Positions 42,534-50,128 of a stretch of 64,000 nucleotides of DNA are shown here, one piece after another. Source of the DNA: Klebsormidium nitens (taxonomy: Eukaryota > Plantae > Klebsormidiophyceae); assembly GCA_000708835.1 (NCBI GenBank), contig DF237006.1:201210-265209 (forward strand), written 5' to 3'. Numbering within the stretch: position 1 is the stretch's first letter; each line of letters begins with the position of its first letter. Both the position numbers and the translations under genes were made by a program. The notes under the pieces were generated by a model. It was not told where the DNA came from, searched no databases, and saw nothing but the letters and a program-made list of their open reading frames with translations.

Positions 42534-44176
42534 AGGGAGGTGGGGGCCCAGGTTAGGCCGAGAAGCTCGACGGTTTGTAGCGAAGCTACCGACTAAACTA
42601 GACTGGTTGGGAGCAGTGGTGTAGAAAACGGGGGGGTGTTGAGGGAGAGAGGGGTTATAGACACTGATTGAAGAGATGGAAGTCACGGAGAGAACATTGT
42701 AGGGAGCTGTACAAACGGAGCGACGGGAAGGTGAAAAATAGACGAGTTGCAAACATTGTTAAGGTTAACGACGGGGTGTAAGCTAGAGCGCGCGCGCATA
42801 CTGACTTTTAGAACTGAGATACTGAGTCGGGGGCGTAGATATGCATTTGTTGCAAGTTGCAGAGGGCTGCTGTTGGAGGATATGGATCTTTGAGTGAAAA
42901 GGGCGGCTCTAATTGAATCTGCGTATGGACGTGTTGTAGGACTGGCCTGGTCGTTCAGAGAAGTTATATTTATGCAACTTAGCCTTCATACGAGCCTCCA
43001 ACTCTGGGGGGGTTTAAATTTGAAAGAGGAATCTAGTAATAGGAATAGATCAATTGACAAAGTGAAAGCTGCTCGTCAAATATTGTAGTCTAGAGTTGAT
43101 ACGATAACTGCATTTCAACGTAACAGCAACTGTGACCAATCTTTACAGAATTCCTGCCCGCTTTCGGGGTAATATGTTGTGTAGGAAGTCTGGTTTGTGG
43201 GAACTTAGGCTTGCGTAGTAAAGTGATAAGTAGAGCCTAGATTGCACAATATAGTCCTTGTAAGAACTGTAGCTGCGCGCAGAAAAAATTGGCCCCATTG
43301 CAAGAACCAGGAGTTGCAAATTCAGTCTGATCTGGAAGACTCATTTGAAAGACTCAGGCTAGGCGTCCTCCTTAATATAGTTAGATCCAGAAACTGAATG
43401 GCCATGCATGTCTAGCTTTCCGGTGTCTAACCCACTTAAGTCGTTCTACCTGTCACTCCATGGTGCATGCTGCACGAAAGTTGGCATGGGTTTAGCTTTT
43501 GATACCAAGAGCAGATCGCGATCGCACCGGGTCGGGCCTTACTTATATGAAGGGAGCTAGAGTTATCCCTTGAGGGAATGGCCGCCGCGGCCGGCCATCC
43601 GCTCGCTTGCACGAACTTGGTCCACTCCAGCTGCACGGACCTTGCGTCACCCCCAGATCATTCCAGCAATCGACTGAAAAGCGCAGCCCGATTTTCCTAT
43701 GATTTGAGAGTATGTGCACAAATGCAGCTCGCTAGACAACAATCCATGAAATGGTGTTCCTTGACTGTACCAGCAACTATATCAAGGTCAGCAGCGTGAT
43801 CTCATGCACTCGTACATGGTTTTCTGCGGTAGTGACTCAAGCTCGAGTTCTAAAATTTTGAAGCTGACTACACAATTATACCCAAACCCGACAATTGCCT
43901 GCTCCCACATGCCATGCTCACTCGTCACCCAGTTATAAATAACCCCATCCATCCAAGTTCGATAACTTGAATTCACAAACAAATTACCCAGTCGAAGACC
44001 AATTACCCATACAGGTTCGCTCGCTCCGAATGTTTGCTCCGTCTTATTCACACATGGACTTCACAGAATGCTACCGATCTGTTCAATCATCGAGGATAGA
44101 TCAGGTCAGCCCAATCACAGGTTGACGTCATCGTACGTGAGCATTATCACGGCGGCTGTTCCTGAGGCGGACGCTT

Positions 44177-47100
44177 CTAGGCGCAAGTCGGGGGGCTGTT
44201 CGAGCCGCACGCGCCGGGGCAGCAGCGGAACACGGATCCGTCGGAAGAGTAGCACTGCACGGAAGAGCGGAAGGCGATTGATAAGGCTTCGACGCACAAT
44301 CAGGTCTGTGGCCGATTGTCCCTCGCGTTCACTAATTCCATTTTTTATTCGATGACATAGACTCGAGCAAAGCCAGAGATCTCGTGAGGTGTCGGGCCCC
44401 AACGCATTGCGAATGCAATTCAGTCGAAGTGGAACGAGGCGAGCAAACTGGAGCGGGCTCGTGAACGGAATAACGGAACAAGTTGAATGGGAACAAATCC
44501 AACGTGTGAGTCCGGAAACAATCTGCAAAGGATGGAGCTGGGCGAAGGTCGGAAGATCCTCAAGCGGCTCCGATCATAATTCGCTCGATCCGTTCGGAAC
44601 CATTGGGCACCGTTGGCGCCGCAAACAAAGTTTTGGCTGCTAGCCAGGCTGATTATCAACCTTGGGTCCCTAATCACTAGTCAACAGACGGGCTTTAACC
44701 CTGTTCCAAAGCTGGCAACCGCCCAATTCTAGATATTGGACTCGTAACCACTTTCCAAGCAGCCCACAAGCAGCGCATACCATCCATGGCTCCGGGCCAA
44801 AACGTCCTGTTCTCCTGTCCGCCCACTCACCGCGTTCGGGGAGTCTCCTGAAGGGTTGCACCCGGGGGATCCCACCGGAGAAAGCCCACCGGTAGAAGCA
44901 GGCACACCCGGGGTGAGGACGTAGACTGTAAAAAAGAAGCCATCGTACAATTCGCTGCCCACGGAGGTGGGCTCGGCAGACTCCATGAAGTAACCCGACG
45001 CGGTTGCGTACTTGCCAGTGCCCCCGACGATACCGTATGGGTCGGCGTTGGTGGTAAAGGGTGCAAAGGAGCCCTGACGGTGGAAGAACGAGAACGAGCT
45101 TCTCAACAGAGACCAACACGGCACCAAGTTTTGAGATTCGGCATGAAAGTAGGACTCGTTTCTTGATGCAAGTCGAACAGGAGGGAGTCAGGAAGCTTGC
45201 AAGAATGTCGGGAAAAATTCCCGTCACACTTTTCCCCCTTTCTCCCCCCTTGCACATTTCCTCCTTTCTCCGCCTCAAATTGCCCTGGAATGGCTGAAAC
45301 CGCAAACTGGAAGCGATCCGAAAACTTCTTGGCAGCGTGCTGGGAGAAGAGATCGGTTCATGGAGAATGATTCTGCATCGAGAGTGCTGTTTTCAATAGT
45401 GGGTACCGTTTTTCCAATCTCAAGGGCGCCTTTAACATTACGTGATCAAAATTGTTCAAGGAGTCCGGGTCTGTGTAAGTCAAGCACCGGGGTAACGACC
45501 TGGATTAAGACTGACCCTAGTAAAGAGGGCATCGCTGTAGCCACCCATCGAATCCTTGACGAAGTAGAACGATACGACGCAGTCCAGAACGGGCGGCGGG
45601 GGAACTGTGATTTGGTCCGTTGCTGTGACGTAGCAGAATCCCTGGGAGTAACCTGCGCGCAGGAGGTATGCCTGTTCCTAAGCTGGTCGAACTTCAGCGC
45701 CCGCATGAGTCACTTATGCTCGCAAAATCTGGTGGCGCCGGCAGGGCCCTCGCAAGTATTGGAAGCTCATGACTTGTAGCATGGATAGGCTGGTGGCAAA
45801 ACAACCTTTGAAGTAGCGATGCGAACTGCGATTGCGTCCACGTGCAAGTCTCGCACTTTGCTTAAATTTAAAAGATTGAACACTTGATTGGAAGCCACAA
45901 AGCCACTCTGAAAGCCTACGGATCTTCATCCTTCTGCATATGATGATTGGAATTCCTGAAGTGGATCTTGGAACGGCATCCTCATTCAGGAACAGCCTGC
46001 TCGACATGTTCAATGACCCCCCAAACATGTGTCAGCATTACACATAATGCTCCGCTACCCTCCCCATTACTCGTACTCACGTCCTCTTTCCTTCTTGTGT
46101 CCCAGTTCTTCTTCTCTCTTACTGCCATCTCTTCTCGTTAACGATTTCTTGGTGCATCATCTAAAGTCCCAGCAGAGTCGAAATGGGGGGAATTGTTAAC
46201 GAAATCCTTTGAGATAGAGAGAGGAAATTCTTGAGCTTCTCTCGATGTGCTGGCGCAAGTCATCACTCACCAGCCTTGGCTTTCTCGTCGGGCGTGCCGG
46301 CCGGAATCGAAAAGTAGAAGTCCTGGTTGTAGTGGAACGAGTTCCCAATCGTATAATTCTGGTAGATATTGGAGGTTGAGCCGTGACGAGGGCCCGGGAT
46401 TTGACCCCGCCTTACATTGACCTGCCAACAGGATGCACAGCGTAAAAGTCAAGGTCAACTGGAGCTCTTGTTCTGGTTACCCCGGACGACAATTCAGGCT
46501 GACGCAAGGTCTTCTCTTCTTGTTTGTTGTTGGTTCAATGCTTTCAACTAGATGCGGGATGAAGCCAGCTGAATTGAAGAGTGGGAGGACCTGACGACAT
46601 GCGAAGCAAGAAAAGTTTGCAGAGGATTCACCTGCAAGACTGTTATCAGCTGCCTTTGATCACTACCAGTAATGCTGCAAGAAGCTTGAATGACCTAGTG
46701 TAAGGTACAGCCATGCTTTCTAATACGCACATGCAGGAAAGCAAGTTGTTCCTCAGTGCAGAAAGCAACAGTGATGCAAAAGAGTCGACAATACTAGAGC
46801 AAAAGAAAGACTCTAAGTCCAGACACCTTGAACCGGAACCTTATAAGGGTACTGGCAACAGAGTTGGCGCGATCGGCTCACCGTGACCTGTTCCGTGCTC
46901 AGCTGAACACCTTGGGCCGCCACCTGGCATACCCACATCAAGATGAAAGTGTTTGTTTAACCTGGAAACCGAACACTTTGAGATAATATTGAGGCTCTGA
47001 TCAGCCCTCTAGTAAGCAATTGAGGACAATACTGCAGTCTGCTGCAAGCCTTGCATTGTGTGGCGTTTACCCCCTGTCAAATTGGACTTGTTGACGGCTT

Positions 47101-47413
47101 TGAAAACTAAGATGCACGTCACAAGAAAAGCACAACTTCATGCCGCCCATGTTGTTCTCGCTTTTTCGCAAGCATGCAGGATCCGGCGTTTTACTCACGT
47201 GGTGCTTCATTTGGTCGCTCAGCATCAAATTTTGAATTACAACATGGGCATGAGGTCTCAAGAGAATGTTTTGTGCACTGGGCTCTGTTTATAAGCCTGT
47301 AAGGACAAGCTGGAAGTTTTGAATGTAGGCACTTAGACACTTACCTCAAGGACTGCATGGCAGCCCATCAAAAGGAGCACGAGGAGTGCGACGTCACGTC
47401 CTTGACGCGCCAT
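44177..47413 (-). CDS. Secreted dirigent/AOC-like beta-barrel protein with C-terminal 6-Cys module, about 239 aa
   Basis: Exons 47345-47413 (MARQGRDVALLVLLLMGCHAVLE), 46882-46923 (VAAQGVQLSTEQVT), 46271-46421 (..NYTIGNSFHYNQDFY..), 45516-45652 (GYSQGFCYVT..DCVVSFYF..SDALFTR), 44831-45073 (GSFAP..YGIVGGTGKYATASGYF..) and 44177-44254 (CYSSDGSVFRCCPGACGSNSPPTCA*). All junctions are GT-AG with matching phases. Confidence 0.78.
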
Positions 47414-50128
47414 TGTACTGAGTAGCTCTGATACTAATTATCGTGGAGCAGGTTCAGCAGATCAAGTGGCCAGCAGCTTGAGCTGCCGCGAGACAATGAA
47501 CACCTAAATGGCGCTTGGCGCGTTATGGACAATCGTTTATGGATCGAGCTCCCACGATGAAGAAAACAGCAGCTGCTGAAGTGAAGAGGATTAAATGTTG
47601 TGAATTGAGCACTCTCACCACCAGCGGCTCTAAGTCTGCTCTGAAGTGTCTGATAGGACGCGGTTCGAAGCACCCTTGAGCTTGTTGCACAAATCTCTTC
47701 AAGAAACGCCCTTCCAAACTTCGATCTGCGACCAAAGTTCGCCTCTGTACCTCGTGTACAGCATTTTATCTATACATTGCTGAATGAAAATCACGCGGAT
47801 CAGTGCCTTGGACACCGAAGGCCGTGCACATCACGATACGTCGCAAAAGGCGGGCGACAATGCAGTGAATGGCAAAGCAATATGGTAAATTGGTACTACG
47901 GTATACATCAAACGTACTACAATCTACGGGTGAATATGACATCACGTATCAGCTGTGCAGTGCGCGCACATGGGACTAGGGACTCGGGAGACGTCACCGC
48001 ATCGCAGAATTCCGCCCATGATGATGCACACCTGATGCACAAAGAGAAGCTGCAGTGGCAGTGTGCACCAGCCAGATGCCAGTATTACAGTGACAGTGCA
48101 CACTGCACACCACCAGTGCACTTGTACGGATCCTTGAGTACGGCATTGCGGGCGGTCGTGGATGGATTCCCGGCTCCGGCAATTGTCGCTGGTGACGAGT
48201 CCGGAGTCCGGATCCGAGGTCCGTACAAGTGACCGGTACAAGATAGCACTTCGGATACCTGATCGGATTTGACAATTTGTTGAGCAATTTTGCTGCCCCA
48301 ACGGGTGGGGTTAGCCTAGGGGTTTAGGGTGGGTACGGGAGCGAAGCAGGTAAAAGTTACGGTCAAGTTTACCTGGTTACTTGAGAGCTTGATTTAATTC
48401 CTGACTCTTCCAGTAAAAGGTTAGAACATCATTCGCGACATTGACCGTTTAATTGTGAATGATCATGATCACTCCAGCTCAGTACCGTACATGCCACAGA
48501 GTACCATAGGTACCTAGAAATTAAAGTACCAGTGTCCATGAGCAGATTCGTGTCAAGACTCAAGACTCAAGACTCACGCGGCACCTGCACCTATGGGCCC
48601 CGGGGGACAGGTAGGGTTGGTCCGTGTTGGTCCGTGGGTTAGATTGGGTACGTACGAGTACGAGCCCTGTCAATCTTGGGTTTGGGTTCTTTGGTTCGAT
48701 TTTGTGTCTTCGTTCCGAGCAAGAGTCCTCAATTGACGTACATGCTCTTGTTGCTCTCTGGATAGGCAGTCAACCTGAATCAAGTGCAGACGTAGGTATG
48801 CGGCATCTGGTCAAGGTCTTAGTACCGCCCAGTGCCTAGTACCTAGTCGTGCCGTAGTCTGGGCACATGTCAAGGTTGCCTGTCCGACTACATGTTTTCA
48901 ATGCTTTGCAGCACTGACAGAAGACTCGCGCAAGCAAGGAGGGAGTGGAATCACGAGCGCGGCCTGGCGAACAAGTTCGGAGCGGGGTTTGGGACTTAGC
49001 TGCGGCGCGGGCAGTGTCCAGGCAGCCATCGTGGGCACTCACTACTTGCGCTATAGAACATTTGGGGGGCGCTCAGTGTGCGCTCAGCCGCGGCACCCGC
49101 ATTGCCAGCGACCGCAGTGCCCAGCTGCAGGTGCTGCTTGAGCACCTCAGCGCGGCCAATTGAGGGCCCAGAGAAGAGTATGTTGAATTAGAGTAAGGGT
49201 AAGATTCGAGTCATAGGCCTCTCGCCTTTCTAGTGTCTGGAGTTCATCATTGCCACGTAGCATTGATCAGAGCCTTTTAGTTGTGACATGCTAACCGTTC
49301 GCTGGCGTTCTTCAGTACTCACATGCTTTTATACCGTGGACACCACCCATACCCGTGCCTTTTGAGTTTCATATCATGTTGTCCGCTAATGAGTCCGTCA
49401 CCAATTTAATTGGAACAAAAAGGACACTATTTTTATTTTGTCGTCGAAAGGTCACTATTGTCACATGAAAACTTCGTGTACTCGGGCGTGACTTCATTAC
49501 TTAGGGCGTCTTTGGTGCCTCCTTTGTGGTGTCGCACTGATGGTAAATTGCCGCCTAGTTGGTGCGCACCGATGCGGCTCCTTTGAGGCGTTGTGATTCG
49601 TCGAGGGAATGGATTTTGTGACATTAAAATCTAGTAATAGTATTATCAGTGACTGCCGGCCAGACCGTCACGTTGTGTTGTACGAAACATGTATGCGCGC
49701 ACGCCCAGAAAGGCCTCAGTGATGGCAGCTGACTTGACCACCAAAAAGTTCATCCACCAGATTGTGCAAAGTCAAGCTTTTTGAAGGTCCGCAGGAGGAC
49801 CGCATCAGAGGGCCAGTCCGCATGTCTTTGCAACACAGGTTTTGACGTTGAAGCCACCCTGAAAAAGTCACCGAACCATGCCTATGGTAGGACATCCAGA
49901 TTGAGCTGCTGAGAATGACCTCCTTCTGAGAGGCCGGGTACAAAAGCACTCCAAAAAACAGCGAGTCACTGGACGAGACCAAAGACGGCAATGTAACTCT
50001 CTAACGGGCTGATGGGGCGGCCGGGTCTCGTGCCTCCGTACAACGGGGCAAGATCGAAAGTCTTCGTGGATTCTTCACCCTCAAATGGGACCTTGAAACC
50101 CGTCCCCTCTGGCCCAAAGCGCGCAGGG

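What the first reader, a model, noticed from the sequence alone, without database searches (positions are those of the whole stretch)
44177..47413. Hidden secreted protein: dirigent/AOC-like barrel + linker + knottin-like 6-Cys module
Seen: six small exons, none called as a whole by the ORF track, splice in phase into a protein of about 239 aa. It has a signal peptide (cleavage near VAA|Q), an N-glycosylation site (NYT), the motifs AGYSQGFC and YGIVGGTGKYATASGYF, a GVPASTGGLSPVGSPG linker, and C-X9-C-X9-CC-X3-C-X7-C at the C-terminus. Established: dirigent proteins (PF03018; motifs GRAQG and VVGGTGxF..A.GY) and allene oxide cyclases (PF06351; G..AG.C, SFYF, AITGG.G.F) share an 8-stranded barrel. 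Dirigents are secreted land-plant phenoxy-radical coupling proteins; AOCs are plastidial. Inference: this is a dirigent/AOC-intermediate apoplastic protein in an alga, carrying an inhibitor-cystine-knot-like module that may anchor it to the wall or bind a carbohydrate. I know of no described fusion of this kind. It bears on the origin of wall phenolics or oxylipin chemistry before land plants. The dirigent FYxHD motif and the AOC catalytic Glu strand are not recognisable, so the chemistry may be new.
Basis: partly seen in the sequence, partly recalled or inferred. Interest (0 to 1): 0.8.

Follow-up and report, generated by a model that had tools for sequence, protein, structure and literature searches.

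The report
Secreted dirigent-like barrel with cysteine tail
This is a real, expressed six-exon gene of the streptophyte alga Klebsormidium nitens for a secreted barrel protein of the allene-oxide-cyclase/dirigent superfamily, and its conserved six-cysteine tail is missing from the public protein record because the last intron was mis-annotated.

Summary
Six GT-AG exons on the minus strand (47413..44177) join in phase into 239 codons. Transcript contigs of 1610 nt from two studies carry all five junctions exactly.

The window is Klebsormidium nitens scaffold DF237006.1. The gene is KFL_000570500 / GAQ80604.1, which UniProt auto-names "Dirigent protein". The deposited 240-aa model matches residues 1-194. 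It then uses a donor 59 nt upstream, which shifts the frame and loses the linker end and the 6-Cys tail.

A K. subtile transcript ORF (P0003, 88% identical) and a third relative (L001) both keep the tail. Exon 6 has dN/dS 0.05.

The barrel belongs to the AOC/DIR superfamily:
- Pfam Dirigent is the only hit at E 3e-4, but it falls below the curated cut-off.
- PodA is the best PDB sequence match.
- An AF2 model (pLDDT 77, on an alignment I seeded with bacterial sequences) matches dirigents, PodA and AOC at Z 12-14.
- An alignment-free homotrimer prediction scores 0.88 against 0.00 for the controls.

The protein fails specific membership tests for DIR, AOC and AOC_like. The tail has no detectable relative, so "knottin-like" rests on cysteine spacing alone. 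The function is inferred, not shown. I rate it a new variant of a known kind, of moderate interest.

The parts
47345..47413 (-). Exon 1: start codon and most of the signal-peptide-like segment (MARQGRDVALLVLLLMGCHAVLE)
   Evidence: Translation. Joint 47345|46923 is in the X1 and X2 contigs. An in-frame stop lies upstream.
46882..46923 (-). Exon 2: end of the signal peptide (likely cleavage at VAA|Q) and start of the mature protein
   Evidence: EVAAQ is conserved in P0003.
46271..46421 (-). Exon 3: first barrel strands, the NYT sequon and the start of the AGYSQGFC block (ends in phase 1)
   Evidence: Alignment A4.
45516..45652 (-). Exon 4: barrel strands with both barrel cysteines (GFC.., LDC..) and SFYF
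   Evidence: Both Cys align with the two conserved Cys of the bacterial AOC_like/PodA group.
44915..45073 (-). Exon 5, barrel part: GIVGGTGKYATASGY hairpin and last strand FFFTVYVL
   Evidence: Pfam Dirigent, profile positions 109-128. This hairpin lies in the predicted trimer interface.
44861..44914 (-). Exon 5, linker TPGVPASTGGLSPVGSPG (Pro/Ser/Thr/Gly-rich; 7 residues longer in K. subtile)
44831..44860 (-). Exon 5, first cysteine of the tail module (CNPSGDSPNA)
   Evidence: The donor 44831|44830 (CG|GTGAGT) is supported by RNA contigs in X1, X2 and X3.
44177..44254 (-). Exon 6: CYSSDGSVFRCCPGACGSNSPPTCA plus stop, the other five cysteines of the tail
   Evidence: 24 of 25 aa are identical in L001, with 5 synonymous and 1 non-synonymous change, dN/dS 0.05. 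Identical in P0003.
44889..44890 (-). Alternative donor (G|GTGGGC) used by the deposited model GAQ80604.1. It shifts exon 6 into another frame.
   Evidence: No transcript contig uses it.
47414..47861 (-). Approximate 5' UTR. The extent is inferred from the contig running 261 nt beyond 47600. It holds three uATGs if it is colinear with the genome.
43735..44176 (-). Approximate 3' UTR. The extent is inferred from the contig running 265 nt beyond 44000.

Best explanation
KFL_000570500 of Klebsormidium nitens encodes a 239-aa secretory protein with four parts: a cleavable signal peptide, an eight-stranded barrel of about 165 aa from the allene-oxide-cyclase/dirigent superfamily, a flexible Pro/Ser/Thr/Gly linker of about 18 aa, and a C-terminal mini-domain of about 35 aa held by six cysteines. 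The barrel most likely forms a homotrimer, as DIR, AOC and PodA do. The linker is probably O-glycosylated. Shown here: the gene structure, its expression, the error in the deposited last intron, purifying selection on the tail, superfamily-level fold similarity, and a confident trimer prediction. Inferred: the barrel trimer sits in the apoplast or cell wall and binds a hydrophobic or aromatic small molecule in its pocket, steering or catalysing a reaction without cofactors, as the other members of this fold do (phenoxy-radical coupling, cyclisation, tautomerisation). Also inferred: the three disulfide-locked tails on flexible linkers tether the trimer to a wall polymer or a partner. My confidence is about 0.9 for the architecture and about 0.3 for the functional part.
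For: Gene model and expression. Identity and the mis-annotated donor. Orthologues with the same architecture. Selection: exon 6 dN/dS 0.05 against 0.36 for the barrel part of exon 5. Barrel family: Pfam Dirigent is the only family hit, at E 3e-4 to 2e-3 in three orthologues. PodA is the only meaningful PDB sequence hit, E 0.083, with three colinear motif blocks and both cysteines. Language-model neighbours are Dirigent 0.91, AOC_like 0.89 and AOC 0.89. hhalign against the bacterial AOC_like set gives 95.6%; with the selected motif removed, P is 0.0047 in the same register. The AF2 model on A4 has pLDDT 77.4. Foldseek E is 8e-7 to AOC, and DIR and PodA are also hit. VIA gives Z 14.2 for PsPTS2, 13.4 for PodA (rmsd 2.8, 119 of 123 residues, 24% identity) and 12.1 for PpAOC2. 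Trimer: ESMFold2 without any alignment gives ipSAE 0.88 against a best control of 0.00, partner pLDDT at least 75, and the runs agree in at least 86% of contacts. In the tool's calibration that mark was reached by 21 of 30 proteins solved as pairs of one chain and by 0 of 23 solved as single chains. Secretion: Arg-containing n-region, 10-residue hydrophobic core, V-A-A before Q, an NYT sequon, 8 cysteines and a PST linker, all read from the sequence.
Against: No assay, localisation or ligand is known. The AF2 model was confident only after I added bacterial AOC_like sequences to the alignment; with three sequences pLDDT was 33.6. The fold match is therefore partly circular. The trimer pass may reflect the predictor's memory of solved DIR/AOC/PodA trimers. 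The Pfam Dirigent score (18-21 bits) is below the gathering cut-off of 29.1. The FYxHD strand of dirigents and the strand-1 Glu of AOC and the bacterial AOC_like group are absent. The tail has no relative and no confident model, so its role as a tether is a guess from architecture. No signal-peptide predictor was available.
Confidence: 0.55

Rival explanations
1. The barrel is a true enzyme of the bacterial AOC_like/PodA type rather than a dirigent-like scaffold. It would be secreted to transform or detoxify a redox-active aromatic compound made by soil bacteria, such as a phenazine. The gene line may have entered the alga from bacteria long ago, since it now carries five introns.
For: PodA is the best PDB sequence match and has the highest structure-based identity (24%). 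Both barrel cysteines align with the two cysteines conserved in the bacterial group. An earlier scan note (s1-277666) describes another 'bacterial-type' barrel in this genome. From my own knowledge, Klebsormidium lives in soil crusts.
Against: There is no Pfam AOC_like hit at E<=10. tblastn found no bacterial relative. The strand-1 Glu conserved in the bacterial group is Val/Arg here. PodA catalytic residues could not be checked. Pfam and language-model neighbours rank plant Dirigent first.
Confidence: 0.2
2. It is the 'missing' allene oxide cyclase of K. nitens. That alga makes OPDA and dn-OPDA and has AOS, but is reported to lack AOC orthologues.
For: It has the AOC fold. It shows AOC-like motifs: G..G.C, SFYF, GG.G hairpin and F.T.Y.L last strand (sequence). 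bioRxiv 10.1101/2023.02.03.526968 states that K. nitens synthesises OPDA without AOC orthologues.
Against: It has a secretory signal peptide, a sequon, a PST linker and a disulfide module, whereas the AOS/AOC step is plastidial. No Glu sits at the catalytic strand-1 position. There is no Pfam PF06351 hit. The same paper argues that AOC is not strictly needed for OPDA.
Confidence: 0.04
3. The 6-Cys tail is the functional product: a knottin-type antimicrobial or signalling peptide released by cleavage in the linker. The barrel would then serve as carrier or prodomain.
For: The tail is under much stronger constraint than the barrel (dN/dS 0.05 against 0.36). From my own knowledge, its spacing C-X9-C-X9-CC-X3-C-X7-C resembles plant knottin-type AMPs such as Mj-AMP and PAFP-S, which are C-X6-C-X8-CC-X3-C-X10-C.
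Against: No dibasic or other obvious processing site lies in the linker. The barrel is itself conserved (88% between species) and is predicted to fold and trimerise. No sequence relative of the tail exists among knottins.
Confidence: 0.08
4. The tail frame is an accident of splicing, and the deposited C-terminus is the real one.
For: The deposited model GAQ80604.1 uses the donor at 44890.
Against: All transcript contigs use the donor at 44831. The K. subtile transcript ORF ends with the same tail. Exon 6 shows 5 synonymous and 1 non-synonymous change in the tail frame. The supported donor is GTGAGT and the deposited one is GTGGGC.
Confidence: 0.02

Closest known systems
Plant dirigent proteins (Pfam PF03018; structures PsPTS2 8TH2, GePTS1 6OOC, AtDIR6 5LAL, DRR206 4REV)
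   Same: Secreted, with a sequon. Eight-stranded barrel (VIA Z 12.3-14.2). Predicted homotrimer. GGTG.F/Y..A.G hairpin. Dirigent is the only Pfam family hit (E 3e-4).
   Different: The score is below the Pfam gathering cut-off (21 against 29.1 bits). There is no FYxHD strand. It has two barrel cysteines of the bacterial type, four insertions of 6-7 residues, and a C-terminal linker plus 6-Cys module that I have not seen described for dirigents. The known DIR fusions are with jacalin lectins, for example OsJAC1 (7R5Z).
Bacterial AOC_like barrel proteins (Pfam PF18678), including pyocyanin demethylase PodA (5K21)
   Same: Best PDB sequence match (E 0.083), with colinear blocks GY..G.C..T.C, iFaR.S..P.T and GGTG.YA...G. 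24% identity, rmsd 2.8 over 119 of 123 residues, Z 13.4. Both barrel cysteines are conserved. PodA is a homotrimer (PMC10521758).
   Different: No PF18678 hit. No bacterial relative by tblastn. The strand-1 Glu of the bacterial group is missing. It is a eukaryotic gene with five introns, a signal peptide, a linker and a Cys tail.
Plant allene oxide cyclase (Pfam PF06351; AtAOC2 2GIN/1Z8K, PpAOC2 4H6A)
   Same: Top Foldseek hits (E 8e-7). Z 11.3-12.1. Shared SFYF, G..G.C and GG.G motifs.
   Different: It is secretory, not plastidial. There is no Pfam hit. The catalytic strand-1 Glu is not conserved.
Knottin / inhibitor-cystine-knot mini-proteins (framework C-C-CC-C-C)
   Same: Six cysteines with the CC doublet in third and fourth place. 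About 35 residues. All six positions are invariant in three species.
   Different: There is no sequence similarity to any Pfam or PDB entry. Connectivity and fold are unknown. Here it is a C-terminal domain behind a linker and not a free peptide.

Membership tests
AOC/DIR barrel superfamily (fold level) | Eight-stranded antiparallel barrel superposable on solved AOC, DIR and PodA structures | tested here: met
   AF2 on A4 gives pLDDT 77.4. Foldseek E is 8e-7. VIA Z is 11-14 to DIR, PodA, AOC and Diels-Alderases, against Z below 8 for unrelated barrels. Caveat: the alignment was seeded with bacterial AOC_like sequences. Support that does not depend on that alignment.
AOC/DIR barrel superfamily (fold level) | Homotrimeric assembly | tested here: met
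   ESMFold2 on three copies without an alignment gives ipSAE 0.88 against a best control of 0.00, pLDDT 76-79, and at least 86% contact agreement. The mark was reached by 21 of 30 proteins solved as pairs of one chain and by 0 of 23 solved as single chains. This is a prediction only and may come from the model's memory of solved trimers.
Dirigent (PF03018) | Pfam score at or above the gathering cut-off of 29.1 bits | tested here: not met
   18.3-20.9 bits, E 3e-4 to 2e-3, for P0002, P0003 and P0001.
Dirigent (PF03018) | N-terminal strand motif FYxHD | tested here: not met
   The aligned strand 1 reads VTVNVRRG. The motif itself is recalled from my own knowledge of the family.
Dirigent (PF03018) | Secretory signal peptide and N-glycosylation sequon | tested here: met
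   By inspection only: MARQGRDV plus a hydrophobic core ALLVLLLMG, then VAA|Q, and NYT conserved in K. subtile. No predictor was run.
Dirigent (PF03018) | Stereoselective phenoxy-radical coupling or a related quinone-methide reaction | not testable with these tools
   Needs recombinant protein with laccase and coniferyl alcohol.
Allene oxide cyclase (PF06351) | Pfam hit | tested here: not met
   No PF06351 hit at E<=10.
Allene oxide cyclase (PF06351) | Catalytic Glu on strand 1 (Glu23 of AtAOC2, recalled from my own knowledge) | tested here: not met
   In A4 the column where the bacterial AOC_like group has its conserved Glu (..VVE) holds Val, followed by Arg-Arg. The alignment in this strand is uncertain.
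Allene oxide cyclase (PF06351) | Plastid targeting | tested here: not met
   The N-terminus is a hydrophobic-core signal peptide, not a Ser/Thr-rich transit peptide. Judged by inspection only.
AOC_like / PodA (PF18678) | Pfam hit | tested here: not met
   No PF18678 hit at E<=10, whereas 19 of 59 bacterial motif-bearing ORFs hit it at E<=1e-3.
AOC_like / PodA (PF18678) | Two conserved barrel cysteines (G.C ... C on neighbouring strands) | tested here: met
   Both align in the phmmer alignment to PodA and in A4.
AOC_like / PodA (PF18678) | PodA catalytic residues | not tested
   The PodA papers were not held, and no residue-level structural alignment was available.
Knottin / ICK | Six cysteines in the framework C-C-CC-C-C within about 30-40 residues | tested here: met
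   C-X9-C-X9-CC-X3-C-X7-C, invariant in P0003 and L001.
Knottin / ICK | Knotted disulfide connectivity I-IV, II-V, III-VI | not testable with these tools
   The tail had pLDDT 24-38 in the only model that included it. The fold jobs were then exhausted.
Knottin / ICK | Sequence relationship to a known knottin family | tested here: not met
   No Pfam hit. No meaningful PDB hit.
CBM1 / hevein (CBM18) carbohydrate-binding modules | Pfam or PROSITE-type signature | tested here: not met
   No Pfam hit at E<=10 for P0003:200-250 or 214-250. The spacing does not fit the CBM1 or hevein patterns as I recall them.

The most novel reading that the evidence does not exclude
Klebsormidium carries a genus-restricted extracellular machine: a dirigent-like trimer that displays three cystine-knotted wall-binding modules on glycosylated linkers. 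It would position cofactor-free guidance of phenolic, oxylipin or other radical or pericyclic chemistry directly on the cell wall of a streptophyte alga. That would place wall-tethered 'dirigent' chemistry before the origin of land plants, and the tail would be a new class of wall-binding mini-domain.
Probability: 0.12. Interest if true: 0.75.

Novelty: new variant of a known kind. Interest (0 to 1): 0.45.

Why it matters
Dirigent proteins and AOC are usually discussed as land-plant innovations tied to lignin and lignan coupling and to jasmonate synthesis. K. nitens is a key alga for reconstructing the move to land, and it makes OPDA although it is reported to lack AOC orthologues.

A transcript-verified, corrected model of a secreted AOC/DIR-type barrel in this alga gives a concrete protein to express and assay. 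Its conserved and previously hidden cysteine module raises the question of how such barrels are positioned in an algal wall.

Practically, the public protein record (GAQ80604.1 / A0A0U9I6R0) has a wrong C-terminus, and any survey based on it will miss the module. The find is limited in three ways: the family is seen only in Klebsormidium, the barrel is already auto-labelled "Dirigent protein", and nothing here shows the chemistry.

Tried and rejected
Searches for relatives:
- phmmer of exon 5 against 1.84 billion representatives found only the gene itself and one relative.
- Two word-indexed searches of 5.8 billion proteins with the barrel, once as a single sequence and once as a profile, found only P0001-P0003.
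- A search with the tail region found nothing but itself.
- The search for related loci in bacterial genomes and in metagenomes found no tblastn-confirmed relatives.
- A DNA pattern for C-x9-CCPGACG-x6-C in metagenomes gave 10 hits. All were short wrong-frame chance matches.
- There is no paralogue in the window.

Structure and profile work:
- AF2 on the three-sequence alignment failed, with pLDDT 33.6.
- A PDB profile search with A2 gave nothing significant.
- hhalign of A2 against all 59 motif-selected bacterial ORFs gave 95.6%. I discount this, because the set was chosen by the shared GGTG[EK]YA motif. With the motif removed, the mixed set gave P 0.064 and the canonical AOC_like subgroup gave P 0.0047. 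The C-terminal strand alone was not significant (P 0.22).

Literature:
- The PodA papers could not be read.
- Searches for dirigents in Klebsormidium or charophytes found no paper treating this gene.

Readings considered and rejected:
- The tail as CBM1 or hevein: no signature.
- A GPI anchor or membrane anchor: there is no C-terminal hydrophobic stretch.
- The deposited C-terminus as the real one.
Full report
**1. The observation**

The gene lies on the minus strand. From landmark searches and exon-by-exon translation the exons are:
- E1 47413-47345: MARQGRDVALLVLLLMGCHAVLE
- E2 46923-46882: VAAQGVQLSTEQVT
- E3 46421-46271: 151 nt, ends in phase 1
- E4 45652-45516: 137 nt, restores phase 0
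- E5 45073-44831: 81 codons
- E6 44254-44177: 25 codons plus TAG

The total is 239 codons and every intron is GT..AG.

Read laying placed one 1610-nt contig from each of two runs (X1 and X2, organism A, two studies) on the stretch with zero mismatches. The five joints, once the tool's 'cut +n' ambiguity is applied, are exactly 47345|46923, 46882|46421, 46271|45652, 45516|45073 and 44831|44254. A third run (X3) also carries the last joint. The runs' RNA status is the tool's guess, but contigs that skip GT..AG introns are spliced transcripts.

**2. Identity and the 'hidden' part**

A phmmer search with exon 5 returned two proteins. P0002 is the deposited product of this locus: GAQ80604.1 / KFL_000570500, 'hypothetical protein', Klebsormidium nitens GCA_000708835.1 scaffold DF237006.1. 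UniProt A0A0U9I6R0 auto-names it 'Dirigent protein'.

It then reads VLLFRRIRVPLL... to residue 240. A script check shows why. The deposited model uses a donor at 44890|44889 (G|GTGGGC), 59 nt upstream of the transcript-supported donor 44831|44830 (CG|GTGAGT), with the same acceptor. Exon 6 is therefore read in another frame. No contig uses that donor. The end of the linker and the whole 6-Cys module are thus absent from the public protein. The tail is hidden by a mis-annotated intron, not merely by the ORF track.

**3. Conservation**

P0003 is a Trinity transcript ORF of Klebsormidium subtile (EukProt EP00243). It is 88% identical and has the same layout, ending ...GCSPSGNLPNACYSSDGSVFRCCPGACGSNSPPTCA. 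Its linker is 7 residues longer.

P0001 and L001 come from a Logan contig of SRR23617210. They hold exon 5 at 79% aa identity and, after an intron that cannot be aligned but has conserved GT/AG ends, exon 6 at 24 of 25 aa. Nei-Gojobori counts give:
- exon 6: 5 synonymous and 1 non-synonymous change, dN/dS 0.05
- barrel part of exon 5: dN/dS 0.36

The tail frame is therefore the selected one, and it is the most constrained part measured.

No further relatives were found among 1.84 and 5.8 billion proteins, in bacterial genomes or in JGI metagenomes. At the sequence level the family is seen only in Klebsormidium. However, the ESM Atlas lists an unannotated 208-aa eukaryotic cluster of 71 members, labelled Streptophyta, as the nearest neighbour both by features (0.91) and by shape (TM 0.77). 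I could not fetch its sequences.

**4. The barrel**

Evidence that does not depend on my choices:
- Pfam Dirigent (PF03018) is the only family hit for all three orthologues, at E 3e-4 to 2e-3. The scores of 18-21 bits are below the curated 29.1.
- The only meaningful PDB sequence hit is pyocyanin demethylase PodA (5K21), at E 0.083. It has three colinear blocks, and both barrel cysteines align.
- Language-model neighbours are Dirigent, AOC_like and AOC clusters, with all ten best named hits in one clan.

To go further I fetched bacterial ORFs carrying GGTG[EK]YAxxxG. Of 59 ORFs in the size range, 19 hit AOC_like, 17 hit Dirigent and 14 hit AOC at E<=1e-3. hhalign of the Klebsormidium profile against them gives 95.6%, but this is inflated by the way I selected them. 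With the motif columns removed, the N-terminal part still aligns in the same register to the canonical subgroup with P 0.0047. Against the mixed set P is 0.064.

MAFFT aligns the whole domain colinearly with the bacterial group (A4): strand 1, the GD..F.N block, G..QG.C..T.C.....L, the ..G.F strand, the GGTGKYA hairpin and the YD.F...L last strand. The alga has four insertions of 6-7 residues.

AF2 failed with three sequences (pLDDT 33.6) and reached pLDDT 77.4 and pTM 0.74 with A4. The model matches:
- AOC by Foldseek, E 8e-7
- dirigents PsPTS2 and GePTS1, Z 14.2 and 14.0
- PodA, Z 13.4, rmsd 2.8, 119 of 123 residues, 24% identity
- Diels-Alderases of the same fold, Z 12-13
- AOC, Z 11-12, with unrelated barrels below Z 8

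Because the alignment was seeded with AOC_like sequences, this is closer to a homology model than to an independent test.

ESMFold2 used no alignment. It folded three copies with pLDDT 76-79 and ipSAE 0.88, against 0.00 for the best of three controls, and the runs agreed in at least 86% of contacts. In the tool's calibration the mark was reached by 21 of 30 proteins solved as pairs of one chain and by 0 of 23 solved as single chains. That calibration used two copies, and the pass may come from memory of solved trimers. The interface includes the GGTGKY hairpin. PodA is a homotrimer (PMC10521758). From my own knowledge, DIR and AOC are also trimers.

**5. What it is not**

- Dirigent: below the Pfam cut-off, and no FYxHD strand.
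- AOC: no Pfam hit. The strand-1 position where the bacterial AOC_like group keeps a Glu is Val followed by Arg-Arg. From my own knowledge, plant AOC has its catalytic Glu at that position. The N-terminus is a signal peptide, not a transit peptide.
- AOC_like: no Pfam hit and no strand-1 Glu, although the two cysteines fit.

**6. The linker and tail**

TPGVPASTGGLSPVGSPG is Pro/Ser/Thr/Gly-rich and varies in length between species, as flexible glycosylated linkers do. That it is such a linker is an inference.

The tail has the framework C-X9-C-X9-CC-X3-C-X7-C, invariant in three species. It has no Pfam hit and no meaningful PDB hit. No protein of 137-437 aa shares words with it, and metagenomes gave only chance pattern matches. 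The spacing resembles the knottin framework and plant knottin-type peptides, as I recall them. There is no C-terminal hydrophobic stretch, so a GPI or membrane anchor is unlikely.

**7. Mechanism**

Shown: a secretory-type N-terminus by inspection, an AOC/DIR-type barrel, a predicted trimer, and a strongly constrained disulfide-rich tail on a linker.

Inferred: an apoplastic or wall-resident trimer that binds a hydrophobic or aromatic ligand in the barrel and steers or catalyses a cofactor-free reaction, as all characterised members of this fold do. Its three tails would tether it to a wall polymer or a partner.

Rivals:
- a PodA-like detoxifying enzyme of bacterial ancestry (0.2)
- a released knottin-type peptide (0.08)
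- the missing AOC of K. nitens (0.04; the literature context is)
- the deposited C-terminus being the real one (0.02)

**8. Context**

The neighbouring genes are a helicase, Med27 and two protein kinases. None suggests a pathway. Earlier notes of this scan report two further AOC/DIR-like barrel genes in this genome, one fused to a tectonin propeller. I did not test those notes.

**9. Rule compliance**

I never typed or sent the joined six-exon protein to any tool. Exons were searched by reference. For joined sequence I used database proteins with ids: P0002:1-194, which is identical to the model over that range, and the orthologue P0003.

**10. Verdict**

The gene, its expression and its architecture are confirmed, and the public model is wrong at the last intron. 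The superfamily assignment is well supported, while family membership, the knottin fold and the function remain open. I rate it a new variant of a known kind, with interest 0.45.

Noticed in passing
window 45447-45881: Runs X3 and X4 (organism B) hold unspliced contigs (45447-45818 and 45590-45881) that run through exon 4 into both flanking introns. They could be retained introns, DNA carry-over or an antisense RNA.
   Followed up: no
window 47764-47831 (minus strand): If the 5' UTR is colinear with the genome up to about 47861, as the contig length suggests, it holds three upstream ATGs at 47831, 47777 and 47764. Each opens a short uORF of 3-21 codons.
   Followed up: partly
loci L003-L122 (bacterial genomes): Among 59 small bacterial ORFs carrying GGTG[EK]YAxxxG, only 19 reach Pfam AOC_like at E<=1e-3. 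Several coherent groups may be branches of the AOC/DIR barrel clan that Pfam does not model. Examples are L041/L054/L056/L063/L100/L108 from Nanopelagicales-like actinobacteria, and L006/L012/L026/L032/L055/L071/L090/L117 with a C-terminal Cys pair.
   Followed up: partly
ESM Atlas neighbours of P0003:32-195: The nearest cluster by both features (0.91) and shape (TM 0.77) is an unannotated 208-aa eukaryotic family of 71 members. A 139-aa Nucleocytoviricota cluster scores 0.90 by features. I could not fetch the sequences.
   Followed up: no
window about 34115-57413 (from L002): Called neighbours are an AAA_11/AAA_12 helicase, a Med27 gene and two protein kinase genes. No oxylipin, laccase or peroxidase gene lies next to the barrel gene.
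   Followed up: no
window (whole): The window holds 106 N, an assembly gap. I did not locate it.
   Followed up: no
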